Part shown: positions 1,627 through 9,219 of the stretch, piece by piece
Numbering within the stretch: position 1 is the first letter of the stretch
Layout of the letters: each line of letters begins with the position of its first letter
IMG/VR virus record: IMGVR_UViG_3300020479_000030
Coordinates: 1 to 9,219 of that record
Strand: one strand, 5' to 3'
DNA: 9,219 nt
The notes under the pieces: model-generated
Seen by the model: the letters and a program-made list of their open reading frames with translations, nothing else
Databases searched by the model: none
Told to the model about the DNA's origin: nothing
Program-made: the position numbers and the translations under genes

Positions 1627-1818
1627 ATGGCGCGCATGAAACCAATCTCATTCAAAGTAGACAGTGAAACATTAGATATAATCGAGCTTTATGCGAATCT
1701 CAAAAAGATAAGCAGAAGCGAAGCAATAAGGGATCTAATATGGCAAGGTTTCAAATGCTACCAAGAAAAAGAAAACAAAAGAATACAGATAAAAGTTGAA
1801 CGAATGAAATTGTTATAA
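1627..1818 (+). CDS. Ribbon-helix-helix (CopG/MetJ-Arc type) transcriptional regulator, 63 aa
   Basis: PISFKVD strand, SETLDIIELYANLKK helix, ISRSEAIRDLI helix with the canonical SRSE.IR motif. Confidence 0.88.
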   Translation: MARMKPISFKVDSETLDIIELYANLKKISRSEAIRDLIWQGFKCYQEKENKRIQIKVERMKLL

Positions 1819-1882: not shown

Positions 1883-2176
1883 TTAACTGGTTTCTTCTAA
1901 ATATTCGCTATATTCTAGCCCTATTGTTATCAACAATATAAAGCCCATAGCCATTAACCCTAACGCTACTGGGTTTAATATCACTGAGCCATTTTGTAGA
2001 TTTACACTAATCCCCAAGAAGTATATAGCAAAAAATGCCAAGAAGCCGATACCTAGCCCTAAGAAGAATCCTCTAATTATCCTTACTCCTAATCTGCTTT
2101 TCTTTCCACCGGGAGATGGCTGACTCATTATGAAACCTAGCGCGCCTAGCACTACTGGGTTTATTCCGATTCTCAT
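1883..2176 (-). CDS. Small integral membrane protein (about 97 aa, 2 clear TM helices); candidate envelope protein
   Basis: Hydrophobic segments GFFLGLGIGFLAFFAIYFLGISV and PVALGLMAMGFILLITIGL, with a basic KKSR..R..R patch before TM1. ATG at 2176 is preferred because the track's GTG (2185) forms a GTGA SD for it. Confidence 0.75.
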   Translation of the reverse strand: MRIGINPVVLGALGFIMSQPSPGGKKSRLGVRIIRGFFLGLGIGFLAFFAIYFLGISVNLQNGSVILNPVALGLMAMGFILLITIGLEYSEYLEETS

Positions 2177-2210
2177 AGCTATCACAATATTAATTCAGTA
2201 TTCTAGTATT

Positions 2211-3381: not shown

Positions 3382-3396
3382 AAAAAATATTTTTTT
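3382..3396. terminator. Palindromic bidirectional terminator AAAAAATATTTTTT between convergent genes
   Basis: Perfect 14-bp palindrome (3382-3395) between the stops at 3372 (+) and 3395 (-). Confidence 0.6.
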
Positions 3397-3958
3397 AGCT
3401 CTTTTTCTTTTCATCTTTCTTTTCTAACGGGTTATCAATTGGGGTCTTTTCGATATTTGTTGACTCTAACATTGCATTTTCGAATATTGATACATCGGCT
3501 TGGTTTTCTATAGCAGTTCTCCAAGCTAAAGTTTTTACTAAATTCCAATTATCGTTATTTATTTGCTCATCCAATGCATCAATAGCACCCATGGATGCTC
3601 TCAATTTCTCATACTTTTTTGCTAAATCTGTCCTTATTCCTATTGCTCTAACATCAATAAGGATTCTGTGCCCTAAGGCTGTAGGGGTCTGATAAACTAA
3701 CATATCTACTAACAACCCATACATTTTTAGGTTATCTGCTAATGCCCTTGCATAATTTTCTACTCTTCTCATCATATAGCCAATTACCATAGAAATATTG
3801 TTTCTAATATTCATTCTGTTTATAGACTCTATATCTAGAAAATTTGCATGCAAACCTTGCCCGACTTCGTCATCTGCTAGAATTTTTGGCGCAGTTTTTA
3901 CAACTTTTTTCTCATTATTCTTCTGTTCTGTATTTTCATCTTTGTTATCCGATTCCAT
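3395..3958 (-). CDS. Hypothetical 187-aa protein with charged, probably disordered termini; likely paralog of 4688-5026
   Basis: Clean ORF with a TTTATTT box about 24 nt upstream (leaderless); 53-aa gapless similarity to the 112-aa ORF. Confidence 0.8.
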   Translation of the reverse strand: MESDNKDENTEQKNNEKKVVKTAPKILADDEVGQGLHANFLDIESINRMNIRNNISMVIGYMMRRVENYARALADNLKMYGLLVDMLVYQTPTALGHRILIDVRAIGIRTDLAKKYEKLRASMGAIDALDEQINNDNWNLVKTLAWRTAIENQADVSIFENAMLESTNIEKTPIDNPLEKKDEKKKS

Positions 3959-3979
3959 AATTTAATTTACGTGGTTTTG

Positions 3980-3995
3980 CGAAATAAATATTTCG
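3980..3995. promoter_or_regulatory. Perfect inverted repeat CGAAATA-aa-TATTTCG overlapping the TATA box of ORF187; putative operator
   Basis: Arms at 3980-3986 and 3989-3995; the minus strand reads CGAAATATTTATTTCG. Confidence 0.55.
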
Positions 3996-4079
3996 TTTAT
4001 GTTATCGGTTCTACTATTAATTTAATTTTCCAAAATATACGGATTGAAAGTAACAGTTTTTTTCTAGATTATAATGGAT

Positions 4080-4187
4080 TTCCTTATAGAATTCCAAATG
4101 GAATTGGTTAAGAAATTTGCTATGAAATTAGTTAAGAAAATGGTTAAGAAAATCGAATAAAAATTCCTTATAGAATTCCTTAGCAAA
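4080..4187. repeat. Degenerate tandem array of nine 12-bp units
   Basis: TTCCTTATAGAA/TTCCAAATGGAA/TTGGTTAAGAAA/TTTGCTATGAAA/TTAGTTAAGAAA/ATGGTTAAGAAA/ATCGAATAAAAA/TTCCTTATAGAA/TTCCTTAGCAAA; an exact 16-mer TTCCTTATAGAATTCC occurs at 4080 and 4164. Confidence 0.85.
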
Positions 4188-4195
4188 TTATTTAC

Positions 4196-4531
4196 CTAAA
4201 AAATTGGGGTACCGCTTGGTTTATTTTTTGACTTTTTCTTTGTAATATCTCTGTAAAATTGAGAAAATATCCCATCTGCTACACTTTGCCCTAATGCTTT
4301 CTTAAAATCTGTTACACATTGGTCAATAGGGTAATCTTTATTACAACTTGCTAACTGTGCTGATACTGCTTTACATATTTTTGTTAATAGAGCATCAAGT
4401 TCTTCGTCTGTCATGTTTCCGCTATAATACTCAGATGACACTCTTCTCATTAAAATCATTAATTGTGTCTCTTCGCTTTCCATTTGGCAATTTCTAAATA
4501 GATTTTGAATAAGTTGATTCATAGCCATCAT
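4196..4531 (-). CDS. Hypothetical helical protein, 111 aa, with 4 Cys and a basic C-terminal tail
   Basis: ATGA overlap with the upstream 48-aa RHH gene, GAGGAG/GTGA SD upstream; last gene of a three-gene minus-strand operon. Confidence 0.78.
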   Translation of the reverse strand: MMAMNQLIQNLFRNCQMESEETQLMILMRRVSSEYYSGNMTDEELDALLTKICKAVSAQLASCNKDYPIDQCVTDFKKALGQSVADGIFSQFYRDITKKKSKNKPSGTPIF

Positions 4532-4674
4532 GGTTGTTCACTCTCCTCTTTCTCCAAGAATTCTGTTATTATAATAAGTAATAAATCTTCAACAGTTACG
4601 CCTCTTTTATCAGCCAATTTTCTAAGCCTATCTATCAGAACAGCAGGCGCTATTATGTGTAATTCTTCTGACAT
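4528..4674 (-). CDS. 48-aa ribbon-helix-helix (CopG-like) protein
   Basis: Not in ORF track. MSEELHIIAPAVLIDRLRKLADKRGVTVEDLLLIIITEFLEKEESEQP*; AGGTG SD upstream, fills the gap between 4688 and 4531, and its stop overlaps the next ATG. Confidence 0.82.
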   Translation of the reverse strand: MSEELHIIAPAVLIDRLRKLADKRGVTVEDLLLIIITEFLEKEESEQP

Positions 4675-4687
4675 TTATTTACACCTA

Positions 4688-5026
4688 TTAGCTATTCTCA
4701 TTTTCACTATTAAAATCTTCATAAGACTCGGTATCTACTTCTTTCAGCCTTTGAAATCTGAGTGTGTGTTTTTCTAGGTCTTGGATTCTATCCTTCTTTA
4801 CGGCTGTTACTTCTAGATGTATTACGATATCTATTCCATTATCTTTCCATTCTACTTTAGTAGTTGTTGATATTAGAATACCGCTCTTTTGCATGTACCG
4901 AGATACAAAATCCGCGTAATTGCTTATTTGGTCAGCTTTAGCTCTGAGAATTTCTAGTAATGCATCTTTTGCTTTTTCACTCTCTATGTCTTTTACGTTA
5001 ATGAATTGGCTACTCATGTATTTCAT
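4688..5026 (-). CDS. Hypothetical 112-aa alpha-beta-beta-alpha protein with an acidic tail; likely paralog of 3395-3958
   Basis: First gene of the minus-strand operon divergent from the MCP genes; TTTATTT box about 27 nt upstream. Confidence 0.8.
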   Translation of the reverse strand: MKYMSSQFINVKDIESEKAKDALLEILRAKADQISNYADFVSRYMQKSGILISTTTKVEWKDNGIDIVIHLEVTAVKKDRIQDLEKHTLRFQRLKEVDTESYEDFNSENENS

Positions 5027-5156
5027 TTAAAAATACATTCAGAAAAAAATAAATGTTGCTCACGGAAACACTATCATCTGTGTTCTTTTTCTAGCTTATT
5101 CTTATGTTTTCAAATGCGCTAACTCACACTTTTTGTGTGTTTTTGCTACTGAGTGC

Positions 5157-5200: not shown

Positions 5201-5557
5201 ATGGCTATATCCCACACACTAGAGGAAATGGTAAGCAAATACACAGCGAAGATGAACCCCCAACAGGTCGGTAGCCGTTATCAGAACTCTAAGACGGTAG
5301 CAGTAAATAGATATATGCAAGGATTCTACCCATTCATGGCTGTAATACCCCTAGTAAAGAACATATTAGAGTCTAACGGTGTTTCCGCAGGCAAGCAAGG
5401 GCAATACTTCGCTTTTGTATTTCAGTTAGTAAAAGAAGCACAAAAACACAGCCTACAAGAATTAGCTAATATCAGCGCAGGTTTACAACAAAAATTCACA
5501 ACTGAAGGATGCGACCCATCAATATTAAGTAAATTAGCTAACCTAGTAGTAGGGTGA
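5201..5557 (+). CDS. Major capsid protein 1 (SIRV2/AFV1-fold, A-DNA-coating helical capsid)
   Basis: Nearly gapless alignment with the downstream MCP (MAI, KY..K, KNIL...G...G..G.Y.AF..Q, DPS.L...A...G); pattern matches the rudivirus/lipothrixvirus coat protein four-helix bundle. Confidence 0.88.
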   Translation: MAISHTLEEMVSKYTAKMNPQQVGSRYQNSKTVAVNRYMQGFYPFMAVIPLVKNILESNGVSAGKQGQYFAFVFQLVKEAQKHSLQELANISAGLQQKFTTEGCDPSILSKLANLVVG

Positions 5558-5570
5558 GGGGGTGAAATAA

Positions 5571-5945
5571 ATGGCTATAGTTAAAAATCTGGGTCAAGCA
5601 GTAAACAAATATCAATTGAAATATGACGGTACGAATGTAACTAATAGGCTTACGGCGTTAGGTAGCCTAGTAGAAGAGAACTACGAAACCGGCGTTAGCG
5701 TTACTTACAATGCTGTAGGTATTGCTAAGAACATATTAGCTAACTTAGGAATTCCGCCAGGTCACTGGGGTTACTACATAGCATTTGCAGAGCAAGTAGC
5801 AAGATATACCGTACACTATGGTGGACAGACACTACAACTTAGAGTTAGTGCATTAATGTCCTACTACGTAACAGCATATCAAGCTGACCCAAGCGTTTTG
5901 ACTCAAATAGCCCAGGCAATTATCGGAACAGCACCACCTTACTAA
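5571..5945 (+). CDS. Major capsid protein 2 (SIRV2/AFV1-fold)
   Basis: C-terminal LMSYYVTAYQADPSVLTQIAQAIIG resembles the recalled SIRV coat protein LKGYYISAFNANPQVLDAVVNIITG; strong GGGGGTGA SD. Confidence 0.9.
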   Translation: MAIVKNLGQAVNKYQLKYDGTNVTNRLTALGSLVEENYETGVSVTYNAVGIAKNILANLGIPPGHWGYYIAFAEQVARYTVHYGGQTLQLRVSALMSYYVTAYQADPSVLTQIAQAIIGTAPPY

Positions 5946-6000: not shown

Positions 6001-7071
6001 ATGCGAAAAGTCGCAGTAGTTACATCTCCGTGGTCGGTTTCTCTTCAGAAAGTATCACGCTCTATAGCCCAGGTTTTCGATGAAAAGAAAGATGAATTAA
6101 ACATAGATGGTACTAAGCTGTTTTTATCACAGCAAGTTTCGCCAACAGAATACCAAGACGTAGATTTAGCTATAGTAGTCATGACTTTTGACCCGCTCTT
6201 CGTAAAAGCTTATGCATTTATTGTTTATTACCTACAACAATATGGGAAAAAAGCGATTTTCTACACTACAACTGAAGGAAAACTGCTACCGACGGATGGA
6301 ATTGATTGGATAAAAAGAGAAATTGTTCCTTATGCAAATTCCGAGTACACAAAAGAAAAGCTAATTAAATATGGCATGAGAGTAGCTGGGGTAGTGTACC
6401 ATGGAATTGATTTTCAAAGATTTCAAAGTTACCCAGACGCAAGACCGCTTATTCGTGAACAACTAGGATTGTCAGAGAATGACTTCGTAGCAGGATATAT
6501 AGCTGGGTGTTATTCTAGGAAAGGTCATGATCGTTATGCTGAAGTCATAAGACAAGTATATAAAAAAGACCCCTCTATCAAATTTGTTGTTCTTACCACT
6601 GATAAGTGCGCTAAGCATTACGATGGCGTGCCTAACACTGTCGTAGTAAGTGATTTCGGCAAGCTTGATGACGAAGAGGTAGAACAAATGTATCAAGCTT
6701 TTGATATTTACGTGCATGCTAGCCTAAGTGAGGGTTTTGGATTGCCAGTTTTAGAAGCGTTAGCGTCAGGATTGCCCGTAGTGCACACTGATTATAAGCC
6801 ATTGAGCGAAATAACCACTAAGGAAACTAGTTTCAGGGCACCTACGCGTTTTATTTCTTACATACAAGAAACCGGCGCAATAAAATACGAATTGCATTAC
6901 TACAAGATTGATGAATTTGTTGATGCAATATTAAAGGCTAAAGAAGCAGTGCTAAGTAAAAAAGAGTACTATAGAGAAAAAGCATTGGAAAGGGCTAAAG
7001 AATTCGATATACATAAGGTTTATAATGCCTTTGTGCAATTATTAAATCGAGGAGAAACTAAACATGAGTGA
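6001..7071 (+). CDS. Glycosyltransferase, GT-B fold, family GT4 (Glycos_transf_1); probably virion protein glycosylation
   Basis: VVYHGID, RKG, and YQAFDIYVHASLSEGFGLPVLEALASGLPVV (E-x7-E motif); GT genes next to MCP genes are typical of Ligamenvirales. Confidence 0.95.
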   Translation: MRKVAVVTSPWSVSLQKVSRSIAQVFDEKKDELNIDGTKLFLSQQVSPTEYQDVDLAIVVMTFDPLFVKAYAFIVYYLQQYGKKAIFYTTTEGKLLPTDGIDWIKREIVPYANSEYTKEKLIKYGMRVAGVVYHGIDFQRFQSYPDARPLIREQLGLSENDFVAGYIAGCYSRKGHDRYAEVIRQVYKKDPSIKFVVLTTDKCAKHYDGVPNTVVVSDFGKLDDEEVEQMYQAFDIYVHASLSEGFGLPVLEALASGLPVVHTDYKPLSEITTKETSFRAPTRFISYIQETGAIKYELHYYKIDEFVDAILKAKEAVLSKKEYYREKALERAKEFDIHKVYNAFVQLLNRGETKHE

Positions 7072-7768: not shown

Positions 7769-9219
7769 ATGAGTAGTGATAACTCTAAACTTGAGTTATT
7801 CACGATAGACGATATTAACTTTATACTTGATGCCATACACAAGGCTAATGCTGACTCTGACGAATTCATAATAGTACCTGAAGGTTTCAGCCTTGATGAA
7901 ATGGCTAGTGCATTACATGGTATCACTGACCCTATAGGTCAGATAGAGAGTTGGCTACAGAGTACGCTTAACCAAATTGCATCATGGCTAACTTCAGCCG
8001 TTTCAACAATGTTAAGCCCATTTGTTTCCGGTGTACAACAGTTCCTTAATGGAATAGTAAGTACATTAGAGAGTATTCCACAGTTGTTCACGCCAATAGG
8101 AGAAGGATTTGAAGCAATAACGAATTGGCTTAGTAGCTTCTTTACAAATCTACAAAGTGTTCTGAGTAATGCATTTCAGACGCTAGGCGTTACTTTAGAG
8201 AAATTCTTCAAGCCCGTAGGAGAGGCATTTTCAAAATTAGAGGACTTTATTACTAGTTTTGTAAATAAATTTGGTGATCTGATAAAGACCGCTACCGGTG
8301 ATTTGCAAAAAGGTATAGAACAAATTATAAAGCCAATAGGTGACGCGCTATCTAAATTAGGACAAGGAATTGAGAACTTTTTCGGAAATATCAGTAATAC
8401 ATTAAAGGCTATTGTCAGCGATTTGCAAAAAGGCTTAGAGAGTGCTTTAAAGCCTATTGTAGATACATTAACTAAATTAGAAAGTGGAATAGAGAACTTT
8501 TTCACTAAATTTGGAGATACACTAAAGACCATTTTCGGTGATATCGAAAAAGGCTTAGAGCAAGTGCTTAAACCTATATCTGATGCTATAGCCCATTTAG
8601 AACAAGGAATAGTTCAATTTTTCGGCGAAATTGGTAATACATTAAAGCAAATTTTAGGCGGAATTCTACAAAAAGTATCTAGTCTATTTGAAGATTTTGT
8701 AAATGTATTTAAAACCTTTGGTAAGGATATATCTGACTTCTTTACTACCTTTGAAAAGAAAATAGCAGGGATATTTAGTAGTATAGCCGATGACATAAAG
8801 AAGTTTTTCGAACCACTAACAAATGCGTTTAAAACAATCTTTAAGGATGTTGATACATTCTTCGGAAACCTTGGTAAGGTATTCAAAGAAGTTTTGAGCG
8901 ATATAACTAAAGGGATAACTGACTTCTTTAAGCCCGTAGTTGACTTCTTTACGGGGTTATTTGATAAGATTACTCAATTCTTTAAGCCCGTGATAGCGTT
9001 TTTCGAAGGGGCATATGATAAGCTTAAAGAGGTATTTTCGCCACTTATACATTTTTTTGACGTATTAGGGAAAGATATAATTGACTTCTTTAAGAACCCC
9101 GCTGGAACAATAAAATCATGGTTTAGCGATATAGGAAAAGATATAGAAAACTTCTTTAAGCCGGTAATTGATGTCTTCAAATTTGTATATAACGGAATTG
9201 AAGATGTAATAAAGAGCCC
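7769..9219 (+). CDS. Large amphipathic-helix repeat protein (>=483 aa, 3' end outside window); tape-measure/apolipoprotein-like
   Basis: Not in ORF track. ATG 7769 with a GAGGAG SD, open to the window end: MSSDNSKLELFTIDDINF...KPIGDALSKLGQGIENFFGNISNTLKAIVSDLQKGLESAL...KPVIDVFKFVYNGIEDVIKS. W/F residues recur at 11- and 18-residue spacing. Confidence 0.88.
   Translation, partial: MSSDNSKLELFTIDDINFILDAIHKANADSDEFIIVPEGFSLDEMASALHGITDPIGQIESWLQSTLNQIASWLTSAVSTMLSPFVSGVQQFLNGIVSTLESIPQLFTPIGEGFEAITNWLSSFFTNLQSVLSNAFQTLGVTLEKFFKPVGEAFSKLEDFITSFVNKFGDLIKTATGDLQKGIEQIIKPIGDALSKLGQGIENFFGNISNTLKAIVSDLQKGLESALKPIVDTLTKLESGIENFFTKFGDTLKTIFGDIEKGLEQVLKPISDAIAHLEQGIVQFFGEIGNTLKQILGGILQKVSSLFEDFVNVFKTFGKDISDFFTTFEKKIAGIFSSIADDIKKFFEPLTNAFKTIFKDVDTFFGNLGKVFKEVLSDITKGITDFFKPVVDFFTGLFDKITQFFKPVIAFFEGAYDKLKEVFSPLIHFFDVLGKDIIDFFKNPAGTIKSWFSDIGKDIENFFKPVIDVFKFVYNGIEDVIKS
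8090..9219 (+). repeat. In-frame coding repeats: seven 120-nt (40-aa) units, then 54/54/54/66/54-nt (18/22-aa) units
   Basis: Unit starts at 8090 (TP), 8210, 8330, 8450, 8570 (KP), 8690 (ED), 8810 (EP), then 8930, 8984, 9038, 9092, 9158, 9212; recurrent TTCTTTAAGCC and GATTTGCAAAAAGG DNA motifs. Confidence 0.88.

What the first reader, a model, noticed from the sequence alone, without database searches (positions are those of the whole stretch)
3395..5026. Hidden paralog pair (187 aa and 112 aa) bracketing the 12-bp array: a possible second heterodimer module
Seen: gapless 53-aa alignment of ISNYADFVSRYMQKSGILISTTTKVEWKDNGIDIVIHLEVTAVKKDRIQDLEK with VENYARALADNLKMYGLLVDMLVYQTPTALGHRILIDVRAIGIRTDLAKKYEK. 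It has 11 identities (NYA, G, L, G, I, I, D, EK) and the same helix-G-strand-G-strand-helix pattern, and both proteins carry DIES 23-26 residues before NYA. Both genes are minus-strand with TTTATTT leaderless-type promoters. Inference: the two paralogs, the 48-aa RHH, the 111-aa Cys protein and the array could form an uncharacterised DNA-handling module (replication or packaging initiation) transcribed divergently from the capsid genes. The acidic tail of ORF112 recalls SSB-like proteins.
Basis: partly seen in the sequence, partly recalled or inferred. Interest (0 to 1): 0.7.

Follow-up and report, generated by a model that had tools for sequence, protein, structure and literature searches.

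The report
Paralog pair in archaeal rod virus
Two small genes that flank a 12-bp repeat array in an uncultivated rod-shaped archaeal virus are real, ancient duplicates of one orphan protein family that always occurs as a pair in the few known relatives, but its function is still unknown.

Summary
ORF187 (3395-3958, minus) and ORF112 (4688-5026, minus) exist, and the 53-residue gapless alignment has 11 identities. The similarity is homology. The window pair alone is weak (BLASTP E 0.014; 2 of 2000 shuffles). In a relative, the same pair gives E 2e-7. Family profiles match at 91-96% hhalign probability, against 8.7% or less for nine control families. HMMs built from one family find every member of the other. 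AlphaFold2 gives both the same helix, 12-residue beta-hairpin, helix core. The pair keeps the same positions in all six related contigs that cover both sites: Hjc / 159 aa / B / gap / 111-aa Cys protein / 48-aa RHH / A / two capsid genes. In one lineage the B protein carries the domain twice. No Pfam, PHROG, NCBIfam, PDB or BFVD relative was found, and none in SIRV2, AFV1, SIFV or the 14 kb of SMRV1 scanned. The "heterodimer" and "DNA-handling" readings remain untested. Both proteins are acidic (pI about 5-6), there is no OB fold, and B evolves several times faster than A. The intergenic 12-bp periodicity is conserved in all seven loci. Its likelier binder is the RHH protein.

The parts
4688..5026 (-). 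ORF112, the 'A' paralog. It is the first gene of the A-RHH-C111 operon. The model has helix 17-47, strands 50-61 and 64-76, helix 78-107, and a disordered acidic tail 100-112. The real start may be Met4, where the relatives start.
3395..3958 (-). ORF187, the 'B' paralog, with its own promoter. Residues 1-40 are a disordered Lys/Glu/Asn-rich stretch. The core is helix 49-79, strands 82-92 and 97-108, and helix 110-151 (core about nt 3599-3841). An extra helix 156-166 and a Lys-rich end follow.
4528..4674 (-). 48-aa probable ribbon-helix-helix protein. Its gene overlaps the next gene by 4 nt (ATGA).
4196..4531 (-). 111-aa protein with four invariant Cys (C15, C53, C63, C72) and a basic C-terminal tail. 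It matches no known family.
4075..4194 (.). About ten degenerate 12-bp units, consensus TAAcgAATTTCa on the module's sense strand. They lie between the stop of the 111-aa gene and the ORF187 promoter. No conserved ORF and no Rfam match.
3982..3988 (-). TATA-like TTTATTT, 24-30 nt upstream of the ORF187 ATG (candidate promoter; leader short or absent).
5047..5053 (-). TATA-like TTTATTT, 21-27 nt upstream of the ORF112 ATG, in the 174-bp divergent region shared with the first capsid gene.
5201..5945 (+). Context: two paralogous Ligamenvirales-type major capsid protein genes (118 and 124 aa), transcribed divergently from ORF112.

Best explanation
ORF112 (A) and ORF187 (B) are ancient paralogs of one orphan family of small alpha-beta-beta-alpha proteins: a 31-residue helix, an invariant Gly, a hairpin of two 12-residue strands, and a second helix. 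The duplication predates the split of the known relatives, and both copies have been kept at fixed positions in a conserved block next to the two capsid genes. Shown: homology, the same predicted secondary-structure layout, strict co-occurrence, and a lineage in which B carries the domain twice in one chain. Inferred: the domain self-associates. A two-stranded sheet with one hydrophobic face needs a partner, and the domain occurs fused to itself. So A and B would act as a homo- or hetero-oligomer whose disordered, oppositely charged ends serve as interaction arms: an acidic C-tail in every A, and a basic C-tail plus acidic N-end in the short B forms. Most likely role, at low confidence: non-enzymatic adaptor subunits working with the 48-aa RHH protein. 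The RHH would be the sequence-specific binder of the 12-bp array just upstream of the B promoter, and the complex would control this block or mark the genome for later steps. A and B probably do not bind DNA as generic DNA-coating proteins.
For: Homology: hhalign of the A family against all B domains gives 96.4% probability and E 1.3e-9 over 94 columns. A against the short B forms gives 94.3%, and A against the ORF187/223-aa domains 91.4%. Nine unrelated families from the same loci score 1.8% or less against A and 8.7% or less against any B set. An HMM of A alone finds all B proteins as its next-best hits among all six-frame ORFs (E 5e-10 to 0.41 against noise from 0.65; the weakest, L009, is not separated). 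B-only HMMs find every A (E 7e-13 to 0.005; noise 0.03 or higher). The A and B proteins of locus L008 give BLASTP E 2e-7. Fold: AF2 places the elements as H17-47, E50-61, E64-76, H78-107 in ORF112 and H49-79, E82-92, E97-108, H110-151 in ORF187. The cores have block-mean pLDDT about 81-95. Co-occurrence and order. Domain duplication in the 223-aa orthologue. One invariant Gly across 18 domain copies. Tails and charge. A, short B and long B each form one clade, with A from all lineages together. RHH assignment and array.
Against: No oligomer was modelled or measured. The two AF2 alignments share rows from both families, so the identical topology is not independent evidence. B has its own promoter, evolves much faster (terminal branches up to 1.3-1.6 against 0.3 or less for A) and varies in length (125-126, 187 and 223 aa), which also fits an independent role. 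Every functional statement rests on gene context. The relatives come from only three samples and about five distinct lineages. The link between array unit type and RHH strand sequence rests on two clades only.
Confidence: 0.5

Rival explanations
1. A and B are paralogs that no longer work together. A is a constrained core factor. B is a fast-evolving protein with a separate role, for example host interaction or counter-defence, and each acts as its own homo-oligomer.
For: B has its own promoter behind a 237-342-bp gap. B branches are several times longer than A branches. B architecture varies: 125-126, 187 and 223 aa. The two B subgroups match each other at only 53-65% hhalign probability.
Against: B is never lost and never moves in any locus. 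The short B forms and A have complementary charged ends. No defence or anti-defence family matched, though PADLOC was not searched.
Confidence: 0.25
2. A and B are assembly chaperones for the two capsid proteins. The acidic pair would hold the basic DNA-binding capsid subunits until they load on viral DNA.
For: A shares a 174-bp divergent promoter region with the first capsid gene. A and B are acidic (pI 4.9-5.9), while MCP1 has pI 9.3 and MCP2 7.9. There are two paralogous capsid proteins and two A/B paralogs. The single-capsid-protein rudiviruses SIRV2 and SMRV1 have no A/B homolog.
Against: This is purely contextual. AFV1 and SIFV also have two capsid proteins and lack A/B. There is no similarity to prefoldin or any known chaperone.
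Confidence: 0.12
3. One reading: A and B form a sequence-specific DNA-binding heterodimer that recognises the 12-bp array and starts replication or packaging.
For: The genes bracket the array. The 12-bp period is conserved in all seven loci. It equals the 12 bp covered by one capsid dimer in AFV1 (PMC5517147).
Against: The proteins are acidic and have no DNA-binding motif, family or fold match. Unit consensus is fairly stable within the L006/L008/L009/L011 clade (r 0.61-0.91), although B diverges strongly there. An RHH protein, the classic binder of tandem short repeats, is encoded in the same operon.
Confidence: 0.1
4. The similarity is chance or compositional, and the two proteins are unrelated.
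For: The window pair alone reaches only E 0.014 at 17% identity.
Against: Reciprocal HMM hits, hhalign with nine negative controls, E 2e-7 for the L008 pair, and matching element lengths.
Confidence: 0.03

Closest known systems
The paralogous capsid protein pair of two-capsid-protein Ligamenvirales (e.g. AFV1 ORF132/ORF140, and MCP1/MCP2 of this window)
   Same: An old duplication within the virus, both copies always kept. In the capsid case the products form a heterodimer.
   Different: A and B are not adjacent and are not helical-bundle capsid proteins. They are acidic, and no heterodimer has been shown. There is no sequence relation (hhalign 0.2% or less).
RHH proteins that bind arrays of short tandem repeats (omega of pSM19035, ParR, ParG, CopG/Arc operators); from general knowledge
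   Same: A small RHH gene sits next to about ten short direct repeats near a promoter. One dimer per repeat is the usual mode.
   Different: Binding was not tested here. The RHH assignment is itself weak (PHROG Arc-like E 6.9e-4; Pfam below cut-off). Those systems have no partner like A or B.
HU alpha/beta and IHF alpha/beta heterodimers; from general knowledge
   Same: Small paralogous subunits with helices plus a long beta-hairpin that pair through their sheets.
   Different: HU and IHF are basic, have a different strand count and bind DNA with their arms. No sequence or Foldseek match was found.
Prefoldin alpha/beta subunits; from general knowledge
   Same: A helix-hairpin-helix layout. One paralog has one hairpin and another has two, as the 223-aa B does.
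   Different: There are no Pfam prefoldin hits in any of 18 members and no prefoldin among the 50 Foldseek hits listed per search. The strands here are twice as long, and the 223-aa form has a full helix between its hairpins.
Phage phi29 protein p6 nucleoprotein complex; from general knowledge
   Same: A small dimeric viral protein binds DNA with a 12/24-bp phase. The array here shows both the 12-bp and 24-bp periods.
   Different: This is an analogy for the array only. There is no sequence relation, and no binding has been shown.

Membership tests
One A/B family (ORF112 and ORF187 as paralogs) | Significant profile-profile and profile-sequence similarity, with negative controls | tested here: met
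   hhalign 91-96% against 8.7% or less for controls. Reciprocal HMM hits. L008 pair E 2e-7.
One A/B family (ORF112 and ORF187 as paralogs) | Same predicted fold | tested here: met
   Same order and length of elements at high core pLDDT. Caveat: the two alignments shared rows.
One A/B family (ORF112 and ORF187 as paralogs) | Co-occurrence at conserved positions in relatives | tested here: met
   Both genes are present in L001, L006, L007, L008, L009 and L011. A alone is visible where the contig ends (L002, L010, L012).
A-B heterodimer | Physical A-B interface | not testable with these tools
   No multimer prediction was available. The only indirect support is the tandem-domain 223-aa orthologue.
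SSB-like proteins (OB fold plus acidic tail) | OB-fold DNA-binding core | tested here: not met
   The model is alpha-beta-beta-alpha. No SSB family in Pfam, NCBIfam or PHROGs. Only the acidic tail is shared.
Rudiviral ssDNA-binding protein SIRV2 gp17 (ORF131b) | Sequence similarity to gp17 | tested here: not met
   The A HMM against SIRV2 ORF131b gives E 3.6, which is noise. No hit to it among the 50 Foldseek PDB matches listed per search.
Ribbon-helix-helix (the 48-aa protein) | Match to RHH profiles or structures over the strand-helix-helix unit | tested here: inconclusive
   PHROG Arc-like repressor E 6.9e-4. Pfam RHH_5 E 0.081, below cut-off. PDB ORF56 (2k9i) E 0.18 over residues 4-42. The sequence pattern, including the G-x-T turn, fits.
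Prefoldin | Prefoldin profile or fold match | tested here: not met
   No hit.
Ligamenvirales (context of the window) | SIRV2-type capsid protein fold family, Hjc resolvase and GT1 glycosyltransferase | tested here: met
   Sulf_coat_C E 3.9e-11, Hjc E 7.4e-18 and Glycos_transf_1 E 8e-19. The best named relatives are rudivirus coat proteins at 29-30% identity.

The most novel reading that the evidence does not exclude
The block A / RHH / Cys protein / 12-bp array / B is the assembly-origin system of this virus lineage. The roughly ten 12-bp units would match, unit for unit, the 12 bp covered by one capsid dimer on A-form DNA. The RHH protein would mark the site, and the acidic A/B oligomer would hand the basic capsid heterodimers to it. 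That would give Ligamenvirales their first known packaging or nucleation signal.
Probability: 0.08. Interest if true: 0.8.

Novelty: new variant of a known kind. Interest (0 to 1): 0.42.

Why it matters
How rod-shaped archaeal viruses choose their own DNA for coating, and how their mostly orphan small proteins work, is largely unknown. This work turns two unrelated-looking ORFans into one family with a defined domain, a conserved partner set and a conserved periodic DNA element. That gives a small, clonable set of parts (A, B, RHH, Cys protein, a 120-bp array) for direct binding and structure tests. On its own, a lineage-specific orphan family in an archaeal virus is common and only moderately surprising.

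Tried and rejected
Family and fold searches:
- Pfam, PHROGs and NCBIfam on the window proteins and on all 18 domain copies gave only scattered sub-threshold hits.
- A PDB sequence-profile search gave nothing better than E 0.048, to a designed protein.
- Foldseek of both models against PDB, and of ORF112 against BFVD, gave best E values of 0.66, 1.2 and 0.14, with query-normalised TM-score 0.43 or less among listed hits.
- The weak V-ATPase D, dsRBD, SRP14, OsmC and ferredoxin-like hits were not pursued.

Searches for relatives:
- blastn and tblastn against GenBank phage and archaeal virus records gave nothing for A or B.
- The word-index search found no relative of ORF187.
- The full HMMER scan found only the 223-aa orthologue and a 3091-aa repeat protein. 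That match is a short repeated motif summed over 11 copies, and I rejected it.
- Scans of viral contigs, metagenome contigs and genome contigs added no new loci.

Classical Ligamenvirales:
- HMM scans of the complete SIRV2 genome, most of AFV1 and SIFV, and 14 kb of SMRV1 gave one marginal hit: SIFV0020, E 0.0018.
- It covers only helix 1 and the start of strand 1, at the very C-terminus of that protein, so I did not accept it.

The gap and other checks:
- A coding reading of the array is rejected. The 40-aa ORF at 4064-4186(-) has no conserved counterpart in relatives.
- No Rfam family or tRNA was found.
- A literature search for the sample and assembly identifiers found nothing.

Full report
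**What the window is.** The window is the whole 9219-base IMG/VR contig IMGVR_UViG_3300020479_000030. GC is 27-39%. It encodes:
- an Hjc resolvase (2211-2615, minus);
- two paralogous SIRV2-type capsid proteins (5201-5557 and 5571-5945, plus; BLASTP E 2e-13 to each other);
- a GT1 glycosyltransferase (6001-7071);
- a giant repeat protein that runs off the end.

The nearest named viruses are rudiviruses, at only 29-30% capsid identity. No DNA match exists in GenBank phage and archaeal virus records. It is therefore a divergent, uncultivated Ligamenvirales-like virus with two capsid proteins.

**Checking the observation.**
- The 53-residue gapless alignment is exact: 11 identities, BLOSUM62 score 37.
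- DIES lies 23 and 26 residues before NYA.
- TTTATTT lies 21-30 nt upstream of both ATGs. The heptamer is not enriched in this AT-rich window (12 found, 9.1 expected).
- Taken alone the pair is borderline: BLASTP E 0.014 at 17% identity, and 2 of 2000 shuffles reach the Smith-Waterman score.

**Finding relatives.** ORF112 had two close relatives. ORF187 had none by word search. In a full HMMER scan of 1.84 billion representatives it had one real relative, a 223-aa protein. The other hit is a repeat artefact.

Searching with the capsid protein instead found eight relatives at 66-86% identity. Their contigs, plus the two that encode the ORF112 relatives, gave ten loci, L001, L002 and L005-L012. 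They come from one JGI sample, one ENA assembly and one NCBI assembly.

Wherever the contig is long enough, the order is the same:

Hjc(-) / 159-162 aa(+) / B(-) / 237-342-bp gap / 111 aa(-) / 46-48 aa(-) / A(-) / MCP1(+) MCP2(+) GT(+)

A is 110-118 aa (127 and 138 aa as called in L012 and L011, which look like upstream starts). B is 125-126 aa in four loci, 187 aa in the window and 223 aa in L001 and L007.

**Homology.**
- hhalign of the A family against all B domains gives 96.4% probability and E 1.3e-9 over 94 columns.
- A against the short B forms gives 94.3%. A against ORF187 plus the halves of the 223-aa protein gives 91.4%.
- Nine unrelated families cut from the same loci give 1.8% or less against A, and at most 8.7% against any B set.
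- An HMM built from A alone, run on every six-frame ORF of all loci, finds all seven B proteins as its next-best hits. Six score E 5e-10 to 5e-3. The weakest (L009, E 0.41) is barely above noise (0.65 and up).
- B-only HMMs find every A (E 7e-13 to 0.005; noise 0.03 or higher).
- In L008 the A and B proteins match directly at E 2e-7.
- One Gly, between helix 1 and strand 1, is invariant in all 18 domain copies.
- A tree puts all A proteins in one clade, so the duplication is older than the known lineages. B terminal branches reach 1.3-1.6 changes per site; A terminal branches are 0.3 or less.

**The 223-aa B protein.** It carries the domain twice. Both halves match ORF187 residues 64-121 and 40-105 at about E 1e-10. 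The halves match each other at E 1e-6. Two variants about 90% identical both have the duplication, so it is not an assembly error. The helix after the first hairpin doubles as helix 1 of the second copy.

**Structure.**
- AF2 with an 18-row alignment gives ORF112 a mean pLDDT of 80.5. Ten-residue block means are about 81-93 across residues 11-90. The elements are helix 17-47, strands 50-61 and 64-76, helix 78-107, and a disordered acidic tail.
- ORF187 has a mean pLDDT of 71.6, with block means of 81-95 across residues 41-120. The elements are helix 49-79, strands 82-92 and 97-108, and helix 110-151, plus one further helix and a disordered N-terminal 40 residues.
- The layouts and element lengths coincide. 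The alignments shared rows, so this is supporting evidence, not independent evidence.
- Neither model matches anything in PDB, and ORF112 matches nothing in BFVD (best E 0.14-1.2). The sequence profile finds no solved relative.
- A predicted monomer of a probable oligomer may simply be hard to match, so "new fold" is not established.

**What bears on function.**
- Both proteins are acidic overall, pI 4.9-5.9. The 223-aa form is the exception at 8.5.
- Every A ends in a D/E/N-rich tail. The short B forms have an acidic N-end and a basic PRGxSxKR-type C-end.
- No DNA-binding family or OB fold is detectable.
- A heads an operon with the 48-aa and 111-aa genes: a 13-nt gap, then a 4-nt overlap. 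B has its own TATA-like box.
- The 48-aa protein has an RHH-like pattern and weak RHH hits.
- The 111-aa protein has four invariant Cys and a basic tail, and matches no family.

**The gap.** In all seven loci where it is complete, 12 or 24 is the top-ranked period among periods 5-30, and 0-4 of 300 shuffles reach the observed value. Each locus has roughly 5-12 degenerate units.
- Unit consensus is TAAcgAATTTCa in the window.
- It is AGT....TACA-like in L006, L008, L009 and L011.
- Unit profiles are alike within that second clade (r 0.61-0.91), where the RHH strand is also conserved and B is not. This rests on two clades only.
- No conserved ORF, Rfam family or tRNA lies in the gap.
- In AFV1 each capsid heterodimer covers 12 bp of A-form DNA (PMC5517147), the same as the array period. 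This is a lead, not a result.

**Distribution.** HMM scans of the complete SIRV2 genome, most of AFV1 and SIFV, and 14 kb of SMRV1 gave no convincing A/B homolog. The best hit, SIFV0020 at E 0.0018, covers only helix 1 at that protein's C-terminus. Further scans of viral, metagenome and genome collections added nothing. On present data the family is confined to this small clade.

**Verdict.** The paralogy is real (about 0.95). Self-association of the domain is a reasonable inference, and an A-B heteromer is possible (about 0.4). A direct DNA-handling role for A and B is unsupported (about 0.1-0.2).

The best working model has A and B as oligomeric adaptor proteins in a block whose sequence-specific element is the RHH protein on the 12-bp array. 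The main rival is that B has taken on a separate, fast-evolving role.

Noticed in passing
window 4075-4194; gaps L001:1115-1387, L007:1055-1327, L006:4399-4728, L008:2244-2585, L009:2927-3239, L011:417-746: A 12-bp (and 24-bp) periodicity is the top-ranked period in this intergenic gap in all seven loci, although the unit sequence differs between clades. The period equals the 12 bp covered by one capsid dimer in AFV1 (PMC5517147). It could be an RHH operator array or an assembly-nucleation site.
   Followed up: partly
L001:1388-2059 and L007:383-1054: The ORF187 orthologue in a sister virus is 223 aa and carries the domain twice in tandem. The middle helix is shared between the two copies.
   Followed up: yes
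window about 7772-9219 (+), runs off the end; L005:2723-8524: A giant ORF, more than 1934 aa in L005, is built of repeated helical units with recurring F..P(V/I).D/E.F motifs. It is probably a terminal or fibre-type structural protein.
   Followed up: no
window 4196-4531 (-): The 111-aa protein has four invariant cysteines (C15, C53, C63, C72) and a Lys-rich tail ending in SG..I(L/F). It has no known family. Its gene overlaps the RHH gene by ATGA, in the manner of a coupled pair.
   Followed up: partly
window 1883-2185 (-) and 1627-1818 (+): The 100-aa hydrophobic protein matches phrog_22428 (E 5e-11). A second, clearer RHH/CopG-like repressor of 63 aa matches phrog_876 (E 9e-8).
   Followed up: no
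L016 (SIFV) 8273-9436 (-): SIFV0018 and SIFV0020 are similar small proteins that share an ...E(I/V)EV(N/D) C-terminal ending. SIFV0020 gives a marginal partial hit to the B profile (E 0.0018). It may be chance or a very remote, rearranged relative.
   Followed up: partly
window 4688-5026 (-): Relatives of ORF112 start at the position of its Met4 (MSD/MSE/MTE...), so the real start may be 5017 rather than 5026.
   Followed up: no
JGI sample 3300020479 and ENA assembly ERZ1684502: One hot-spring-type sample holds at least four distinct variants of this virus lineage (the window, L001/L007, L008, L009, L011). That points to a diverse local population that could be mined for a complete genome.
   Followed up: no
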